Virus record (IMG/VR): IMGVR_UViG_3300044633_003049
Location: 147,785-211,784 of that record
Direction: 5' to 3' (one strand)
DNA length: 64,000 nt
Under the pieces are notes generated by a model. It was not told the DNA's origin and ran no database searches. It saw only the letters and a list, made by a program, of their open reading frames with translations. Shown piece after piece: positions 35,322 through 51,041 of the stretch (position 1 is its first letter; each line of letters begins with the position of its first letter). Position numbers and translations under genes: made by a program.

Positions 35322-35810
35322 TTAATAAACTTGGATACAACGGTCCATTCTTAATGAAGCGTCAATTGTTGCCAAATCATCTCTTGAGTAATCTAAATCA
35401 CCGAAGTTCAAACTTGTTAAGAAACAACCTTGTAAAATCCATTTTTCAACCACAACTCCCGTTGGGTCTAACATCTCCAATTCAATGTCTTTCTTATAAC
35501 CCGCAGCATATCCCATACGACCTGTAACTGACTCCGCATGTAAACGGAACCATTCCATAAGTGCTTGAGAAGCAGAAGGACCAATTGGGTCTTTAAATTG
35601 AACTTTAATCTCTTCCCACTCAAATTGACCAGCAACATAAGTTTTTGTGTTCAAGAAAGGAATCTCAACTGATTTAATTTTAGCAGATGGTCTCGCTGTG
35701 GAGAATACATACCACTCATTTATTCCTAAAGATGATGGAAATCTTAGGATAAATCTATTTTTTCTTTTCGGTTCGTAAGGAACCGGCATTTTCATTAATA
35801 AATCTGCCAT
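35322..35810 (-). CDS. Tail tube protein (gp19-like)
   Basis: YEPKRKNRF, RPS, YVAGQFEWEEI, YKKDIELEMLDPTG..VEKW.L.GCF, GDLDY; follows the sheath gene. Confidence 0.9.
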   Translation of the reverse strand: MADLLMKMPVPYEPKRKNRFILRFPSSLGINEWYVFSTARPSAKIKSVEIPFLNTKTYVAGQFEWEEIKVQFKDPIGPSASQALMEWFRLHAESVTGRMGYAAGYKKDIELEMLDPTGVVVEKWILQGCFLTSLNFGDLDYSRDDLATIDASLRMDRCIQVY

Positions 35811-36022: not shown

Positions 36023-36080
36023 ATTCTGGGTATAATATAATAGTATAATTGTTATATAATATGGTTCTACGTGGAGCATT

Positions 36081-36111
36081 AAAAAAGGGTACCATTTCTG
36101 ATACCCTTCTT
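36081..36111 (-). terminator. Intrinsic terminator after the sheath gene
   Basis: Minus strand aagggtatcagaaatggtacccttttttaa. Confidence 0.75.
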
Positions 36112-36134: not shown

Positions 36135-38966
36135 TTAGATATTGTCAAATGAAGCTCCTGTTGGAGTGATTACAAATTCCAAATCAATGAATTCTAAAGA
36201 ACGAGTTGGTTTGATATAAATCTTACCTCTTAATGTGTTAGCATCGATGTCCTCTGGATCATTAGATACACTCACACGGAAGTCATACAAACCTCTTTCT
36301 TTCTTAATTGATTCCAAGATAGGATTTACTAATCTTAAGAACTCTTGTCTTACTTGGTCGTCATTTTGTTCAAACAATAACCTTACAGCTACCGCAGAAA
36401 TCAATTTTCTAGCTCTTAATAATAATCTTCTTACGTTGATTCTATCTAAAGCCGACTCTCTAACTTGTAACGTTTTATTACCCCATATAATGGTACCTGT
36501 ATCAGAGAATGTTGCAATTGGGTTGATTCTCGCCTTATATAACTCATCTCTTTCGTCAAGAGTAAGTTTCTTTTGTGCTTTGATTGCGTTTACCAAACCT
36601 CTACTGTAACCCGCAACTGCGAACCAAGGATAAGATACGTTGTCAGTTAAGGCGATGTTCTTAACAACCTCACCTGTTGGTGGAATATATAATTGAGTTG
36701 CATTATCCGTGTCTCTTACTTGAATCCAAGGCCAATATGTGGCTGAATAGTTTGAGTCAACTGCGATACCGTCTAAATCGTCAATAACGTTAGATGCAAT
36801 AGTTTCATTTGGTGCTCCAATTATATAAATTGAATCCGCTCTATCAGTTTCAATCATGTCAATTGCTTGAGTTGTTAATGAACTATGGTCGTAGAAGTTA
36901 ATACCTGGAGTTGCAAATACGTTAATATCTACGGCCTCAGGATTTGCATATGTTTGAATACCTTCTAAATAAGCATAATAATCAGAGTTTCCATTTGCAG
37001 TGTCAAACAATCCACCATTTGTTGTAAGACCTGAAATATATGTTAATTTTCCAAATATATAACCGTCACCATATGTTCTTACTTGTCTGTAAATGTCCCA
37101 ACCATCAAAACCACCACATACGGCAAATGTAAATTTACGGAAGTTAATACTATCTAATTTACCTTTATCGGTACCTTCTAAATCATAAGGTGTTGTTTGG
37201 TACATTAATCCTGAAACTGTATTTCCAGTTATTGTAGCTGCGTTTATAGATAAGTGAAATCCGTCTGTTGATCCTTTTTGAGTTGCTTCTGTTGAACATT
37301 TATATTTAAACAAATCGGAGTCAAAATTAAAATTACCATCAGAAGATAAACCTAAAGATGTTTTTCTAAATTTATCACCATTACTTGTTATGTCATCATA
37401 AATTGTTTCACCAGAATCAAAAAATTCAGTTTTATAAAGAACACTACCTAATGTTGTTGAACCTGATAAAGTTGCATTTGTAAAACCTTTAAATCCTGCA
37501 GGAAATGCATTTGATGGTGCGTTAGAGTCCATAAGTAACATAATGTATTTAGAATTCAAAGTATACTCACCAGTTGATGTACCTATTTTTCTAGCAACAT
37601 ATCCTGCAACGTCTGGATTCATTGAACATCTTGAGAATTTTTCCAAAACAACCATGTTTTCATCGGAATCATTAAAATCTCTAACTAATATATCAAATTC
37701 ACCTGTTTCAATATTAATATTTTGAATTGTGATTTTAATTTCCTGATTTGCGGCGTTTCCGTCAGAAATTGTAATAACATCAAATAAATCATCAACTTTA
37801 CCACCACGAACTTCAGAAACCACAGTAGGTGACTTTGGTGTGTCCCAAGTATTTGAGAAGTTGTCACCTTCCGCATTATATACTTCAGTTAGGCTTAAAC
37901 CTCTAATTAAACCTTGATTATATAAGTTTTTTGTTAAGTTCGGATAAACTTCGTGAACATATAATGGAACATCGTTACCATCTTTATCATATGGACTTGT
38001 TCCTAAAACTTTAGTTATGTATTTTGTTGACGTTGAATCTAAACTACACGTGAAAACCTTAGCACCTGTAGTTCCTGTAACATAAATATTAAATTCCGAT
38101 AATGGGTCACTTGTTAACGTTGCCCCACTAATAGTAAAAGATGTGTTTCCAGTAACTTGAAAATTTAAAGATTCTTGTGAATAATTTCCTCTTGATCTTA
38201 ATGCCGCCATAACAATTTCCTTATCATATACTGAAGTTGCGGTATATGTATATTTTGTTGTGGTAAAATTCATTGAACTAGCAGCATAAACAAATAAGTA
38301 ACTATACACTTCGGTACCGTTAGTATTGGTAAACACGTTATTCCAATTTTTTATAGTTGCGGTTCCAATAGGACTTGTTTTTTGATTTCCCGTTAAACCT
38401 GATGTTGCTGATGATGGAACATTTCCAATTGTAAACCAATCACCTGTAGATAAACCGCTACCGTAATTAGTGACTATATAATTTGTAACCGTTGTACCAG
38501 TTGAATTGGTTTTACCAGATAATGAACTATAAAAAGTACTATATGTTGGGTTTACAATGTCCTCAGCTGTTGGTGTTGTAATACCTGTAGTTGAACTTGG
38601 AGTTTGTGTTAAGTCAACAGATATACCACCTATTGTTTTAATGCCGAATGTTTTTCCTGCTTTGTAACCTGTCTTACCTAATACTCTTGTTACAAATAAT
38701 TGATTTGACTCTTGTAAATAAGATTTAGCGACATAACCTAATTCATATTTTGGATTGCCAGCACCATCTTTTTCAGGTGAGGTTGGTCCGAAGTATGTTT
38801 TAAATTCGTCAAAATTTGAAATTAATATTGGTTCAAAAGCGGGACCTTTTAAGGTTTCACCCACTAATCCCAATGTTGTAACACCTATACTTTGTGCTAC
38901 GAATGTTAGATCTTTCTCTGATGTATAAACACCAGGAGACACGAAAACTCTGTTATTACTTGCCAT
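36135..38966 (-). CDS. Tail sheath protein (gp18-like)
   Basis: FVSPGVYTSEKD, GETLKGPAFEP, SNYSATYWPW, PWFAVAG..RG, INPI, WGNKTL, RINVRRLL. Confidence 0.95.
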   Translation of the reverse strand: MASNNRVFVSPGVYTSEKDLTFVAQSIGVTTLGLVGETLKGPAFEPILISNFDEFKTYFGPTSPEKDGAGNPKYELGYVAKSYLQESNQLFVTRVLGKTGYKAGKTFGIKTIGGISVDLTQTPSSTTGITTPTAEDIVNPTYSTFYSSLSGKTNSTGTTVTNYIVTNYGSGLSTGDWFTIGNVPSSATSGLTGNQKTSPIGTATIKNWNNVFTNTNGTEVYSYLFVYAASSMNFTTTKYTYTATSVYDKEIVMAALRSRGNYSQESLNFQVTGNTSFTISGATLTSDPLSEFNIYVTGTTGAKVFTCSLDSTSTKYITKVLGTSPYDKDGNDVPLYVHEVYPNLTKNLYNQGLIRGLSLTEVYNAEGDNFSNTWDTPKSPTVVSEVRGGKVDDLFDVITISDGNAANQEIKITIQNINIETGEFDILVRDFNDSDENMVVLEKFSRCSMNPDVAGYVARKIGTSTGEYTLNSKYIMLLMDSNAPSNAFPAGFKGFTNATLSGSTTLGSVLYKTEFFDSGETIYDDITSNGDKFRKTSLGLSSDGNFNFDSDLFKYKCSTEATQKGSTDGFHLSINAATITGNTVSGLMYQTTPYDLEGTDKGKLDSINFRKFTFAVCGGFDGWDIYRQVRTYGDGYIFGKLTYISGLTTNGGLFDTANGNSDYYAYLEGIQTYANPEAVDINVFATPGINFYDHSSLTTQAIDMIETDRADSIYIIGAPNETIASNVIDDLDGIAVDSNYSATYWPWIQVRDTDNATQLYIPPTGEVVKNIALTDNVSYPWFAVAGYSRGLVNAIKAQKKLTLDERDELYKARINPIATFSDTGTIIWGNKTLQVRESALDRINVRRLLLRARKLISAVAVRLLFEQNDDQVRQEFLRLVNPILESIKKERGLYDFRVSVSNDPEDIDANTLRGKIYIKPTRSLEFIDLEFVITPTGASFDNI

Positions 38967-39010
38967 TGATTTTTGTTTGGTTAAATTGTTTTTATTACTT
39001 ATCTAATAAA

Positions 39011-39079
39011 TATCTTTGTTTTTACCAAAGATTTCCTAACTTTTATTAAAAAGATAGTTATTTATCTTTAATTATCTTT
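39011..39079. promoter_or_regulatory. Array of AAAGAT(A)/(T)ATCTTT repeats between the divergent sheath and RHH genes (putative operator)
   Basis: tatcttt 39011, caaagat 39026, aaagata 39050, tatcttt 39063 and 39073. Confidence 0.5.
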
Positions 39080-39082
39080 TAT

Positions 39083-39241
39083 ATGGAAAACAAACAAAAA
39101 AACGTTAAAATAGGTCAGAAACACCACGAAATGTTAAAAAATTTTTGTGATAAAAATGGATTAAAAATTTATAAAGTATTGGAAAAACACATTGAGGAAC
39201 TTTGTAAACCTAAAAAGAAGGACATTTACGGAGATGATTAG
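39083..39241 (+). CDS. Small ribbon-helix-helix-like DNA-binding protein (not in ORF track)
   Basis: Hand translation MENKQKNVKIGQKHHEMLKNFCDKNGLKIYKVLEKHIEELCKPKKKDIYGDD (52 aa): strand KNVKI, helix, G-turn, helix. Confidence 0.7.
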   Translation: MENKQKNVKIGQKHHEMLKNFCDKNGLKIYKVLEKHIEELCKPKKKDIYGDD

Positions 39242-39741
39242 TATAGATAAGATATACTAATTTTTGACCCAACTTTAGGATTGGAGAGATATGTAATTTC
39301 ATCGTCTCCCGTAATCTCAAACCCAACTGACTCTTCTTCAGCTAATCCATTGGTTTCAACTGTTATTAAACTATTGATGTAATTACTTAAGTTAAACACC
39401 GTTGATGTAGAGTAAATAAACTCTTCTTTTTCATATTGTAATAATTTACCCTTATTATCTAATATTACACTATTAATTCCTTTATAAAATTGTACCGTTA
39501 TTATTGAGTTATTTAACGGAGGTTCAATAAAAGTAATCGTACTTGTAAAGTTTATAAACGTAAAACTTAAATCTCTTATTTGACCAATACCGTTCATTGA
39601 AACTGAAAATAAGGTTCCGATATTAGTTCCAACACTAAAATTAGTTTGTGTTCCGTCCGCAACAAAACTGACCGTTGTTATATTAATCGGCATGTTTTGA
39701 CTCTGACTTGAAACGACATTATCTTTTATAAATTCGTACAT
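39238..39741 (-). CDS. Structural protein, stand-alone paralog of the C-terminal domains of the upstream gene
   Basis: MYEFIKDN...DGTQTNFSVGTNIGTLF matches MFEFIKDN...DGIQTVFDVGESIGTLF in the upstream ORF. Confidence 0.7.
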   Translation of the reverse strand: MYEFIKDNVVSSQSQNMPINITTVSFVADGTQTNFSVGTNIGTLFSVSMNGIGQIRDLSFTFINFTSTITFIEPPLNNSIITVQFYKGINSVILDNKGKLLQYEKEEFIYSTSTVFNLSNYINSLITVETNGLAEEESVGFEITGDDEITYLSNPKVGSKISISYLY

Positions 39742-39751
39742 AGATTATAAT

Positions 39752-41032
39752 TTAAAATAAATATCCTACCGATATATTTGAATTTATTGATGGTCTATCC
39801 GATAAAATAATATACGAGTTATCATCTGAAACAATAAATCCGATACCTTGTTGTTCTGCCAATCCATTAATCTCAACTGTAACAACACTATTAATCATTT
39901 CATTTGTATCAAACATTGGTCTATTATTGGTTGGTGGGTCAAAAAAAGATCCCGAACCTGTGAATTGAAACTCTTCTCTAACAAAACTAAAAATTGTACC
40001 TGATGTTCCTACTATTCTACTATTTTTACTTTTATAATAAACAATGGTGAGTTTACTTCCGGCGGTTGGGATATATGGAGAAACAAATTCTATTTTTGAA
40101 GTGTAAGTAATATGTAAATAATTTGTATTTTTTGTTTGTAATACATCATTTACATAAACACCGAATAATGTACCAATACTTTCACCAACATCAAAAACAG
40201 TTTGAATTCCGTCAACTGCTAAATTTACAGTTTGTATTATATCATTAGTATTAACAACTTTATTGACACCAAATTTGGGATTGTCTTTTATAAACTCAAA
40301 CATGGTAAATAATCTATTAATGGCGGGTTTCACTTCAAACTCCTCACTATCTATCAAATAACCTAACATTGTAAATTGGTAATTCTGAACGTAAAATCTA
40401 CGTCCGTCAATCGTTTCAATTGGACTATTATCTTCAATCTTATCAAGAACAATAGGAATGTAATGTCCTTTAATCATTGTGTAATCTTGTCTTGACGCAA
40501 AGTGACGTAATATGATTTTATTAAACTTGTTTAAATCTCTAAATTTATTACATATAATTGTTACATCATAAGTAATATCCACAGGGATAGGTTGTGGGAT
40601 TGTATATATATCCGCACCTAATTGTGAACCATTCCAATTCGGAACTGATGCATAATAAACTTGGTATCTATCGGGTATTGTTCTTTGAACTGCCGGATTT
40701 GTTCCAAATTGAACGTCAGGTTTTCTAATGGTTGCAATAAATGGAAGTTGCATGTTCCCGTCTTCATCACTAAACGACCAATTCTGCATAAACTCTCCCC
40801 ATCTTTGTATTGTAAGAATTTTATTTATAATTGGGATTTGTTTACCGTCAGTTACAACCTTAAATGTTTTTGTAACATAATCTAACATACCCCTATCTAA
40901 ATCATCGTGTAATATAGAATCGGGAAGATTCGTATCTGATTTGGTAATATTATCCAAAAGTTCCTGTCTCCTTTTAGTGAGTTCAGAACCTTTATAGATT
41001 TCAATATTTGTTTTTCTTTTAGGTATTCCCAT
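39752..41032 (-). CDS. Tail completion/terminator-like protein (gp15-like N-terminus) with C-terminal beta-sandwich extension
   Basis: DLDRGMLDYV, LPFI...R, PIPVDITYDVTI; start MGIPKRK at 41032 preferred because the track start overlaps the upstream gene. Confidence 0.55.
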   Translation of the reverse strand: MGIPKRKTNIEIYKGSELTKRRQELLDNITKSDTNLPDSILHDDLDRGMLDYVTKTFKVVTDGKQIPIINKILTIQRWGEFMQNWSFSDEDGNMQLPFIATIRKPDVQFGTNPAVQRTIPDRYQVYYASVPNWNGSQLGADIYTIPQPIPVDITYDVTIICNKFRDLNKFNKIILRHFASRQDYTMIKGHYIPIVLDKIEDNSPIETIDGRRFYVQNYQFTMLGYLIDSEEFEVKPAINRLFTMFEFIKDNPKFGVNKVVNTNDIIQTVNLAVDGIQTVFDVGESIGTLFGVYVNDVLQTKNTNYLHITYTSKIEFVSPYIPTAGSKLTIVYYKSKNSRIVGTSGTIFSFVREEFQFTGSGSFFDPPTNNRPMFDTNEMINSVVTVEINGLAEQQGIGFIVSDDNSYIILSDRPSINSNISVGYLF

Positions 41033-41033
41033 G

Positions 41034-41552
41034 TTATACTCCTCTAAATGTATTGTCTTGTACCGCAGTACATACAATGTTTCTATAATATGGTTTGTAA
41101 CCAAACATATTATGTTTATTATCTGATGTTACCTTTCCGTCATTTGAAACATTATAATATCTTGTTCTTGTTTCAGATTCAGGATATCCAATAAAATCTC
41201 CGTATTTAATGTCAACCTTCAATTCTTCTAAATGTTTTATATATACCGATAATGTCATATTACCTGGTTCGTTGTATCTTAATAACCCACCTTTATATGT
41301 ACTATTCTTTGGTTCTTCTATTTTAACTAACGCATAAAACTCAATAGGTGGGAAATATTTAATTTCATCCACTCCAACTTCGGCGTAAACGTCGTCGTTT
41401 TCTGTTTTTTGTTTATCTACACGATATAGTACCAATTTTATCCCCAAATCACCATGAAGGTACTCCTGACCCATTTGAATATTTAAATCAAAGTCGTCTT
41501 GAGAAAGGAATTTGGACATTCTCGTAATAGGTAGTTTATTATTCATATCCAT
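41034..41552 (-). CDS. Head closure / neck protein (gp14-like)
   Basis: Position upstream of the tail-completion gene; LYRVD, GNMTLSVYIKHLEELKVDIKYGDFI. Confidence 0.5.
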   Translation of the reverse strand: MDMNNKLPITRMSKFLSQDDFDLNIQMGQEYLHGDLGIKLVLYRVDKQKTENDDVYAEVGVDEIKYFPPIEFYALVKIEEPKNSTYKGGLLRYNEPGNMTLSVYIKHLEELKVDIKYGDFIGYPESETRTRYYNVSNDGKVTSDNKHNMFGYKPYYRNIVCTAVQDNTFRGV

Positions 41553-41600
41553 ATAAATAGTTTAATCTTTCATTCTATTTAGTTATATTGTATATATTAT

Positions 41601-44351: not shown

Positions 44352-44390
44352 AAGTTCAAATTTACACTATTTATTAGAATATACCAAATT

Positions 44391-50989: not shown

Positions 50990-51030
50990 TTTATATAAAT
51001 ATCTTTCATAACATTTGATATTTATATAAA
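50990..51030. promoter_or_regulatory. Perfect 14-bp inverted repeat forming back-to-back putative late promoters
   Basis: tttatataaatatc 50990-51003 and gatatttatataaa 51017-51030, between divergent genes. Confidence 0.7.
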
Positions 51031-51041
51031 AGTCCATTTAG

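What the first reader, a model, noticed from the sequence alone, without database searches (positions are those of the whole stretch)
39006..39241. Hidden ribbon-helix-helix regulator with its own repeat operator, divergent from the tail operon
Seen: a 52-aa RHH-like ORF is the only credible plus-strand gene in the first 41.5 kb. It is preceded by five AAAGAT(A) copies in both orientations within 70 bp, and these overlap the sheath TATTTAT site. Its stop overlaps the stop of the convergent gene. Established: RHH proteins (CopG, Arc, MetJ, omega) bind arrays of short repeats and often autoregulate. Inference: a compact switch controlling sheath/tube expression.
Basis: partly seen in the sequence, partly recalled or inferred. 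Interest (0 to 1): 0.6.

Follow-up and report, generated by a model that had tools for sequence, protein, structure and literature searches.

The report
Conserved small regulator beside phage sheath gene
A real, strongly conserved 52-residue ribbon-helix-helix-type DNA-binding protein sits back-to-back with the tail-sheath gene of an uncultured freshwater jumbo phage. The 116-bp spacer between them carries a conserved, helically phased repeat array that is most likely its operator: a tidy but ordinary kind of local gene switch.

Summary
The ORF at 39083..39241 (+) is a real gene. It is intact and divergent from the sheath start in all 146 related viral loci examined. dN/dS is about 0.12, and it is better conserved (70-98% identity) than the sheath (58-85% in related loci, mostly 60-70%).

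Its relatives consistently give weak hits to ribbon-helix-helix (RHH) families only: RepB-RCR_reg 64/66, ParG 60/66, Omega 25/66, and PHROG Arc-like repressor 58/66. The fold model shows the two expected helices.

The five AAAGAT/ATCTTT copies at 39012-39079 are the densest such cluster in the 211-kb record (0/100 shuffles reach it). They resolve into two footprints conserved in 59 distinct relatives:
- **Block A:** ATCTTTG-N7-CAAAGAT, abutting the sheath-facing TATTTAT motif. That motif is a genome-wide promoter-like element found upstream of 40/206 ORFs.
- **Block B:** GATA-N6-TATC-N6-TATC with strict 10-bp phasing, overlapping a TATTTAT that faces the small gene.

The block B array occurs once per genome. 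There is no covariation that would suggest an RNA structure.

The sheath has its own terminator, and metatranscriptome contigs cover it but stop at or before 38987. The target is therefore the sheath alone, not a sheath/tube operon. DNA binding, and whether the effect is repression or activation, are inferred and not shown. It is a new member of a known kind, of moderate interest.

The parts
39083..39241 (+). 52-aa ribbon-helix-helix-type gene. Putative beta-strand K6-N7-V8-K9-I10-G11, helix A residues 12-25, invariant G26 turn, helix B residues 30-41, and a conserved basic/acidic tail KPKKKDIYGDD.
   Evidence: Intact in about 66 loci found through the sheath and 80 found through the protein. 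Codon-position entropy 0.40/0.32/1.01 and dN/dS about 0.125. 249 homologues, nearly all 51-53 aa. RHH family hits. Helices in the AF2 model. Invariant K6 N7 K9 H14 H15 L18 K19 C22 G26 K28 Y30 P43 Y49.
39006..39012 (-). TATTTAT promoter-like motif facing the sheath gene. The minus strand reads CAAAGATATTTATTAG.
   Evidence: TATTTAT lies sense-oriented within 60 nt upstream of 40/206 ORFs, against 3.4 expected. It is present 31-43 nt upstream of the sheath ATG in 59/59 distinct relatives. RNA contigs cover the sheath up to 38949-38987 and stop short of the motif.
39012..39032 (.). Block A: inverted repeat ATCTTTG-N7-CAAAGAT. It lies immediately upstream of, and overlaps, the sheath-facing TATTTAT. 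Candidate operator for the sheath promoter.
   Evidence: (I14). It is the most conserved part of the spacer across 59 distinct relatives. Departures break pairing rather than compensate, and covariation is no higher than in shuffles.
39050..39079 (.). Block B: AAAGATA (39050-56), TATCTTT (39063-69) and TATCTTT (39073-79). The cores GATA/TATC/TATC start at 39053, 39063 and 39073, spaced 10 bp apart. Candidate auto-operator.
   Evidence: Successive TATC cores are 10 bp apart in 92 of 103 cases, and GATA to TATC is 10 bp in 46 of 52. Repeat number varies from 2 to 5, with indels in units of about 10 bp. GATA-N6-TATC-N6-TATC occurs once per record in three records and 0 times in the reversed control.
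39059..39065 (+). TATTTAT promoter-like motif facing the RHH gene, embedded in block B (TATTTATCTTT), 17 nt before the ATG.
   Evidence: A sense TATTTAT lies in block B in 52/59 relatives. It forms a mirror composite with the sheath side: AATAAATATCTTT / AAAGATAGTTATT, 92% complementary (I4).
36135..38966 (-). Tail sheath gene (943 aa), the divergent neighbour and presumed regulated target.
   Evidence: PF04984 and PF17482. phrog_23, E 5.6e-65. Covered by contigs from four lake metatranscriptome runs.
36079..36111 (-). Intrinsic-terminator-like hairpin plus U-run just after the sheath stop. It makes the sheath a single-gene unit.
   Evidence: dG -16.5 kcal/mol, z -4.35, 0/200 shuffles fold as well. 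Sequence.
39238..39741 (-). Convergent 167-aa gene whose stop overlaps the RHH stop. It is context, not part of the switch.
   Evidence: It is a paralogue of residues 268-450 of the next gene. The overlap is conserved.

Best explanation
The ORF encodes a small ribbon-helix-helix transcription factor dedicated to this one locus. The inferred mechanism has four steps.

1. Dimers insert their N-terminal beta-ribbon (invariant K6, N7, K9) into the major groove at the TATC/GATA-centred half-sites.

2. Several dimers bind cooperatively on one face of the DNA at block B (cores 10 bp apart). Block B covers the gene's own TATTTAT promoter-like motif and the predicted start site, so the protein limits its own synthesis.

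3. Another pair of dimers binds the block A palindrome. Block A occupies the 20 bp directly upstream of, and overlapping, the sheath-facing TATTTAT. From there the protein gates RNA polymerase access to the sheath promoter. Repression is more likely than activation, given a centre about 13 bp from the motif.

4. The result would be a self-limiting local switch. It would set the timing or dose of the monocistronic sheath transcript separately from the other TATTTAT-driven structural genes.

Shown: the gene is real and under selection. Synteny is invariant. The repeats are non-random, phased, conserved and unique in the genome. The sheath has its own 5' end region and its own terminator.

Inferred: the RHH fold at full confidence, dimerisation, binding to these repeats, TATTTAT being a promoter, and the sign of regulation.
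For: - Gene reality.
- RHH assignment: PF10723 hits in 64/66 homologues (best E 4.1e-5), ParG 60/66, Omega 25/66, 56B_RHH 6/66. PHROG Arc-like repressor 58/66. NCBIfam RepA regulatory protein 64/66. A PDB profile match to ParG 1p94 over residues 4-42. All ten best named ESM-Atlas clusters are RHH families. The model has two helices at 12-25 and 30-41 with an extended N-terminus.
- Operator: cluster statistics. Footprints across 59 distinct spacers. Strict 10-bp phasing. One array per genome. No RNA covariation.
- Promoter context: TATTTAT enrichment and its conservation on both sides.
- Own transcription unit: terminator, and RNA contigs that end at 38949-38987.
Against: - Every family hit for the window protein itself is below the curated cut-off (15.2 bits against 21 for PF10723).
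- The dimer prediction did not reach its mark, which counts neither for nor against.
- Fold searches with the monomer model found nothing.
- No RNA contig covers the small gene in four metatranscriptomes.
- The block A spacer is itself conserved, which a simple two-half-site operator does not need. It may hold extra promoter information.
- TATTTAT has not been shown to be a promoter.
- The record is only 63% complete, so further sites elsewhere cannot be excluded.
Confidence: 0.6

Rival explanations
1. The repeats are promoter architecture only, for example reiterated or overlapping TATTTAT-type elements and upstream elements of a bidirectional promoter. The small protein, though real, acts elsewhere on host or other phage targets.
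For: The half-sites overlap TATTTAT on both sides. The block A spacer is conserved as well. A similar TATTTAT plus palindrome occurs at a second place in one relative.
Against: The other TATTTAT motifs in the genome lack these repeats: of the 40 upstream contexts listed, only the sheath's carries the block A palindrome, and pattern scans find no second array. The phased GATA/TATC array is unique per genome and always next to this gene. The repeat count changes by whole 10-bp units while phasing is kept, which is typical of protein arrays. Absolute linkage of gene and array in 146 loci is hard to explain if they are functionally unrelated.
Confidence: 0.15
2. The inverted repeats act at the RNA level. 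They would form a hairpin that terminates or processes read-through from the upstream minus-strand genes, or a leader structure of the small gene's mRNA.
For: Both palindromes fold modestly as RNA: -6.5 kcal/mol (z -2.7) and -10 kcal/mol (z -4.4). Convergent genes with overlapping stops leave no room for a terminator.
Against: There is no compensatory change. Variants break pairing, and covariation is not above shuffled or slid controls. The block A stem has two G-C pairs and no clean U-run. The direct repeats and their 10-bp phasing have no RNA rationale. RNA contigs do not extend over the palindromes.
Confidence: 0.07
3. The protein is a ParG/omega-type centromere-binding protein or a toxin-antitoxin antitoxin, and the array is a partition site or TA operator.
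For: The best family similarities include ParG and Omega, which bind arrays of short repeats.
Against: No ParA-type ATPase (PF01656, PF13614) is present in the held 211 kb. No toxin-sized partner gene is co-oriented. The neighbours are the sheath and a structural-module gene in every locus. The family is absent from 185,579 species genomes; no plasmid collection was searched.
Confidence: 0.05
4. The ORF is a chance open frame inside a conserved non-coding promoter region.
For: It is short, has no Shine-Dalgarno sequence, and was not seen in RNA contigs.
Against: Third-position entropy is 1.01 against 0.40 and 0.32. pN/pS is 0.21. The coding frame has zero stops in 34 homologues against 2.5-7.4 in the other five frames. 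Length is kept at 51-58 aa and indels are in frame. Genes of this phage generally lack a Shine-Dalgarno sequence.
Confidence: 0.02

Closest known systems
CopB/RepA2-type and RepB-RCR_reg plasmid copy-number repressors (Pfam PF10723; NCBIfam NF010256)
   Same: This is the best and most consistent sequence similarity, with 64/66 homologues matching. Both are small proteins in which the RHH domain is almost the whole protein, and both act as local transcriptional repressors of a neighbouring promoter (family function from established knowledge).
   Different: The context is phage structural genes, not a plasmid replication gene. The window protein scores below the curated cut-offs. This protein has a conserved C-terminal KPKKKDIYGDD tail.
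ParG (TP228) and omega (pSM19035) RHH proteins
   Same: The profile aligns over the full RHH core, with the shared pattern H-x2-[FL]-K-x2-C-x3-G. ParG and omega bind arrays of short direct and inverted repeats and autoregulate (established knowledge), as proposed here.
   Different: No ParA-type partner is present. The repeat unit here is a 4-7-bp core on a strict 10-bp period. The known units are shorter (omega 7-bp heptads, ParG tetramer boxes with 4-bp spacers, from my own knowledge). The flexible tail here is C-terminal, not N-terminal.
Phage P22 Arc and Mnt (PHROG Arc-like repressors phrog_3180, phrog_582)
   Same: They are phage-encoded RHH repressors that sit between divergent promoters and bind palindromic operators as dimers of dimers (established knowledge). 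PHROG hits occur in 58/66 homologues.
   Different: Arc and Mnt control the antirepressor in a temperate phage's immunity region. Here the divergent partner is the tail sheath gene of a roughly 330-kb, apparently lytic, T4-related jumbo phage. Arc and Mnt have one operator (from my own knowledge); here there are two operator blocks of different architecture.

Membership tests
Ribbon-helix-helix (MetJ/Arc) superfamily | Sequence or profile match to curated RHH families above threshold | tested here: inconclusive
   The window protein is below the cut-offs: PF10723 at 15.2 bits against 21, ParG at 13 against 21.4. At family level, 64/66 homologues hit PF10723 (best E 4.1e-5), 60/66 ParG and 25/66 Omega. 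The other families that hit are scattered and unrelated to each other, and none matches more than 10 members. Some homologues carry a precomputed PF10723 hit.
Ribbon-helix-helix (MetJ/Arc) superfamily | Topology: an N-terminal beta-strand followed by two helices joined by a short glycine-containing turn | tested here: met
   The AF2 model has helices at 12-25 and 30-41, with residues 1-11 extended. Mean pLDDT is 67.6, and 77-80 over the helices. G26 is invariant between the helices, and K6/N7/K9 alternate in the N-terminal segment. The strand itself is not formed in the monomer model, as expected for an obligate dimer.
Ribbon-helix-helix (MetJ/Arc) superfamily | Intertwined homodimer whose paired strands form the DNA-reading ribbon | tested here: inconclusive
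   The homodimer job scored 0.38 against a mark of 0.42, giving no verdict. Monomer fold searches were uninformative.
Ribbon-helix-helix (MetJ/Arc) superfamily | Sequence-specific binding to repeated or palindromic operator half-sites | not testable with these tools
   Only a candidate operator can be shown. It is conserved, phased at 10 bp, unique per genome and adjacent to the gene.
ParG/omega partition systems | A partner ParA/Walker-type ATPase encoded with the RHH protein | tested here: not met
   No PF01656 or PF13614 match in the 211-kb record, while the controls were positive. The neighbours are the sheath and structural-module genes. Caveat: the record is 63% complete.
Type II toxin-antitoxin RHH antitoxins | A co-transcribed toxin gene directly adjacent | tested here: not met
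   The gene is solitary on its strand. Its downstream neighbour is convergent with an overlapping stop.

The most novel reading that the evidence does not exclude
The protein is not a plain repressor. It would be a promoter-specific adaptor that uses its invariant C-terminal tail (K42-P43-K-K-K-D-I-Y49-G-D-D) to recruit or hold back the phage's late transcription machinery at the sheath promoter. Bound at block A, where a -35 element would normally lie, it would give this clade a gene-specific layer of late control. Such a layer is unknown in T4-related phages, whose late promoters are thought to need only a -10-type element plus clamp-coupled activation.
Probability: 0.1. Interest if true: 0.7.

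Novelty: new member of a known kind. Interest (0 to 1): 0.4.

Why it matters
Small ORFs in structural modules of uncultured jumbo phages are routinely missed or mislabelled. Several homologues here carry the spurious name 'coproporphyrinogen III oxidase'.

This one defines a large, tightly conserved family: 249 clusters in the word search, always beside the sheath gene, with a clean predicted operator. That gives a directly testable example of gene-specific control of a major tail protein in a T4-related lineage. It also suggests that sheath dosage or timing is regulated separately from the rest of the tail.

The compact protein-operator pair (52 aa plus about 70 bp) could also serve as an orthogonal regulatory part if binding is confirmed. 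It does not change any general principle, because RHH autoregulators with repeat operators are well known.

Tried and rejected
- **Homodimer prediction:** score 0.38, below the 0.42 mark. No verdict, so not used as evidence either way.
- **Fold searches with the monomer model:** VIA wide PDB (best Z 4.4, unrelated helical hits), Foldseek PDB (nothing) and the ESM-Atlas shape search (no hit). All were uninformative for a 52-residue helix hairpin.
- **Rfam scan of 38500-39800:** only a chance sub-threshold hit.
- **Sigma-70 and terminator consensus scan:** no more promoter-like sites than in shuffles and no terminator.
- **blastn and tblastn against cultured phages:** no relative of the locus or the protein. 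The nearest sheath is Microcystis phage Mel-JY01 at 33% identity.
- **Scan of 185,579 species genomes with the family profile:** none.
- **Block A as a general late-promoter element:** rejected. The extended motif does not recur.
- **RNA-hairpin reading of both palindromes:** rejected for lack of covariation.
- **Hairpin plus U5 after the RHH stop (39238-39265) as a conserved terminator:** rejected. It is present only in the window and one near relative.
- **Metal-site reading of the invariant H14/H15/C22:** rejected. C41 is variable, and ParG shares the H and C positions as core residues.
- **Literature searches:** no description of an RHH regulator next to a sheath gene.
- **First Python simulation:** timed out and was redone.

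Full report
**Setting.**
The window is the last 64 kb of a 211,784-bp IMG/VR virus record, 31% G+C, estimated 63% complete. Related contigs reach 331-334 kb. The phage is therefore an uncultured freshwater jumbo phage. Its sheath is distantly T4-like: the best cultured match is Microcystis phage Mel-JY01 at 33% identity, followed by Flavobacterium and Synechococcus T4-like phages. DNA runs holding the stretch are lake and freshwater metagenomes. From 1 to 41.5 kb, all substantial ORFs lie on the minus strand.

**Checking the observation.**
- The ORF at 39083..39241 (+) encodes 52 aa.
- It sits in a 271-bp gap between the sheath gene (36135..38966 -; PF04984, PF17482, phrog_23) and a 167-aa gene (39238..39741 -).
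- The two stops overlap in the tetranucleotide TTAG.
- The 116-bp spacer to the sheath ATG holds ATCTTT (39012-17), AAAGAT (39027-32), AAAGATA (39050-56), TATCTTT (39063-69) and TATCTTT (39073-79).
- Five copies in 80 bp is the maximum anywhere in the 211-kb record. No other position exceeds 3, and none of 100 dinucleotide-preserving shuffles reaches 5.
- The leftmost copy shares bases with ATAAATA (39006-12), which is TATTTAT read towards the sheath.

**Is the ORF a gene?**
- A word-based protein search found 249 clusters with E of 0.01 or better. Nearly all are 51-53 aa and 70-90% identical.
- Starting from the sheath protein, 80 viral loci were fetched. In every locus with enough flank (about 66), an intact homologue lies on the opposite strand, 114-138 bp from the sheath ATG.
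- Starting from the small protein instead, 80 of 80 loci have the sheath start 113-127 bp away, with one at 75 bp.
- The small protein is better conserved than the sheath. In loci found through the sheath it is 45-92% identical, mostly 60-90%, and in loci found through the protein it is 85-98% identical. The sheath in related loci is 58-85% identical, mostly 60-70%. One locus, L002, is the same phage at 100% for both.
- In 34 gaplessly alignable homologues, the entropy of codon positions 1/2/3 is 0.40/0.32/1.01. pN/pS is 0.21 and the JC-corrected dN/dS is about 0.125. The coding frame has no stops, while the other five frames average 2.5-7.4.
- The ORF is a protein-coding gene under purifying selection.

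**What kind of protein?**
The window protein alone gives only sub-threshold hits, but all meaningful ones are RHH families: RepB-RCR_reg (E 0.021), ParG, and PHROG Arc-like repressors (E 0.005).

Scanning 66 family members individually gave the following:

| Family | Members matching | Best E |
|---|---|---|
| RepB-RCR_reg (PF10723) | 64 | 4.1e-5 |
| ParG | 60 | |
| Omega repressor | 25 | |
| 56B_RHH | 6 | |
| PHROG Arc-like repressor | 58 | |
| NCBIfam RepA regulatory protein | 64 | |

- A profile search of PDB sequences aligns residues 4-42 with the RHH core of ParG (1p94), sharing H-x2-[FL]-K-x2-C-x3-G. It also lists the RHH protein 2kel.
- The ten best named ESM-Atlas clusters by features are all RHH families (a lead only).
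- The AF2 model (mean pLDDT 67.6) has helices at 12-25 and 30-41 and an extended N-terminus. This is what an RHH monomer looks like without its partner strand.
- Invariant residues are K6, N7 and K9 (alternating, as in a DNA-reading ribbon), H14, H15, L18, K19, C22, G26 (the inter-helix turn), K28, Y30, P43 and Y49.
- The C-terminal tail KPKKKDIYG[DE][DS] is conserved but matches nothing known.
- The homodimer job gave no verdict, and monomer fold searches were uninformative.
- I rate the RHH assignment at about 0.85.
- The JGI label 'coproporphyrinogen III oxidase' on some homologues comes from a chance local match.

**The spacer.**
Alignment of 59 distinct spacers shows two footprints separated by variable sequence.

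*Block A* is ATAAATATCTTTG-N7-CAAAGATTTC(C). It comprises the sheath-facing TATTTAT fused to a 7-bp-arm palindrome, and it is nearly invariant.

*Block B* is (A)AGATA-N6-TATC(T/C)TT-N3-TATCTTT, often with a further TATCTTT.
- Successive TATC cores are exactly 10 bp apart in 92 of 103 cases (20 bp in 5).
- GATA to the next TATC is 10 bp in 46 of 52 cases.
- Lineages differ by whole repeat units: 2 to 5 TATC cores, with 10-column indels.
- The last core lies 6-7 nt before the ATG in most relatives. In the window, one unit is missing relative to the majority.

The phased pattern GATA-N6-TATC-N6-TATC occurs once in each of three records (211, 287 and 234 kb), always here, and never in the reversed-pattern control. 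The exact palindromes are likewise unique in the window's record.

Counted as RNA helices, the two palindromes show no covariation above shuffled or slid controls. Most departures break pairing.

Conservation of sequence rather than of pairing, strict helical phasing, unit-wise indels, uniqueness and absolute linkage to the gene together are the signature of a protein-binding array. The adjacent RHH protein is the obvious candidate ligand. Binding itself is inferred.

**Promoter context.**
- TATTTAT occurs only 128 times on both strands of the record. It lies sense-oriented within 60 nt upstream of 40 of 206 ORFs, against 3.4 expected and 15 antisense (listing). It is very likely this phage's own promoter element.
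- In the sense direction it reads as the reverse complement of the T4 late TATAAATA (own knowledge). I note this but did not pursue it.
- The sheath-facing copy is present in 59/59 relatives, 31-43 nt from the ATG. A copy facing the small gene lies inside block B in 52/59.
- The two composites mirror each other: AAAGATATTTATT on the minus strand and AAAGATAGTTATT on the plus strand (I4).
- If TATTTAT is a -10-type element, block A spans about -13 to -34 of the sheath promoter. Block B spans about -22 to +7 of the small gene's promoter.
- The block B position argues for autorepression. The block A position fits occlusion better than classical activation, but the sign is open.

**Transcription units.**
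- Just after the sheath stop there is a 13-bp-stem hairpin followed by U6: -16.5 kcal/mol, z -4.35.
- The tube gene (35322..35810, phrog_4542) has its own TATTTAT. 'Sheath/tube operon' is therefore not the right unit.
- Contigs from four lake metatranscriptome runs, 90-99% alike, tile the sheath from 37500 up to 38949, 38958 and 38987. None covers 39015-39620.
- This fits a sheath transcript that starts in the spacer downstream of the TATTTAT. It also argues against comparable read-through from the upstream genes.
- It gives no evidence that the small gene is transcribed. These are contigs, so absence is not proof, and a regulator's mRNA would be rare.

**Rivals.**
- Promoter architecture only, with the protein acting elsewhere: 0.15.
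- RNA-level hairpins: 0.07.
- Partition or antitoxin role: 0.05. No ParA-type ATPase in the record, no toxin partner, and no relatives in 185,579 species genomes.
- Spurious ORF: 0.02 (refuted).

**Comparison and novelty.**
The locus works like classical RHH autoregulators at divergent promoters (Arc/Mnt, CopG/CopB, omega/ParG). It is most similar in sequence to the CopB/RepA2-RepB_RCR_reg and ParG groups.

It differs in four ways:
- Its context, beside the tail sheath of a T4-related jumbo phage.
- Its two operator blocks of different geometry.
- The strict 10-bp TATC period.
- The conserved C-terminal tail.

No paper in the searched library describes such a regulator, and no cultured phage carries it. 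It is a new member of a known kind. It is worth annotating and easy to test, but not surprising in principle.

**Limits.**
The large representative protein search was not used because the family scans did not leave the protein open.

Noticed in passing
whole record; e.g. window 39006-39012 (-), 41553-41600, 44360-44390, 51010-51041: TATTTAT[AT] lies sense-oriented 0-52 nt upstream of 40 of 206 ORFs, against 3.4 expected. It is probably the phage's own promoter element. In the gene direction it reads as the reverse complement of the T4 late consensus TATAAATA. Several copies sit only 4-8 nt from the ATG, implying very short or absent leaders.
   Followed up: partly
window 36079-36111 (-): A strong hairpin plus U6 lies directly after the sheath stop (dG -16.5 kcal/mol, z -4.35). 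A 325-bp gap before the tube gene follows. The sheath looks monocistronic.
   Followed up: partly
window 39238-39741 (-) and 39752-41104 (-): The 167-aa gene is a paralogue of residues 268-450 of the neighbouring 450-aa protein (37% identity, E 6e-32). Most relatives have a single 415-435-aa gene abutting the RHH stop, so the window carries an extra copy of the C-terminal domain.
   Followed up: partly
homologues P0009, P0015, P0062, P0065, P0099: Some database homologues of the 52-aa protein are named 'coproporphyrinogen III oxidase'. This stems from a chance local match (HH..LK..C...G..Y) and is a mis-annotation.
   Followed up: yes
window 39238-39265 (+): An 8-10-bp hairpin followed by U5 lies right after the RHH stop, inside the end of the convergent gene (dG -10.7 kcal/mol, z -4.2). 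It is present only in the window and one near relative, so it is not a conserved terminator.
   Followed up: yes
L166 975-1010 (G001:C1:87674-87709, a 287-kb relative): A second TATTTAT followed by TATCTTTG-N5-CAAAAGAT lies upstream of an ORF-poor stretch of about 500 bp in a relative. It has no counterpart in the window's (incomplete) record. It may be a second target of the regulator in fuller genomes.
   Followed up: partly
window 37500-38987: Sheath-gene sequences of this phage group are present in four lake metatranscriptome runs as contigs 90-99% alike. The neighbouring 39015-39620 is not covered, so these phages appear to be actively expressing the sheath in lakes.
   Followed up: partly
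window 38972-38988: TTGTTTGGTTAAA, in the sheath 5' leader just before its ATG, is conserved across most relatives, although neither gene has a Shine-Dalgarno sequence. Its function is unknown. It could be a translation-initiation context or part of an early promoter for the small gene.
   Followed up: no
whole record: IMG/VR classes the record as 'provirus'. Related contigs of 331-334 kb with the same gene order, and the absence of the family from 185,579 bacterial and archaeal genomes, suggest a free jumbo phage rather than an integrated element.
   Followed up: partly
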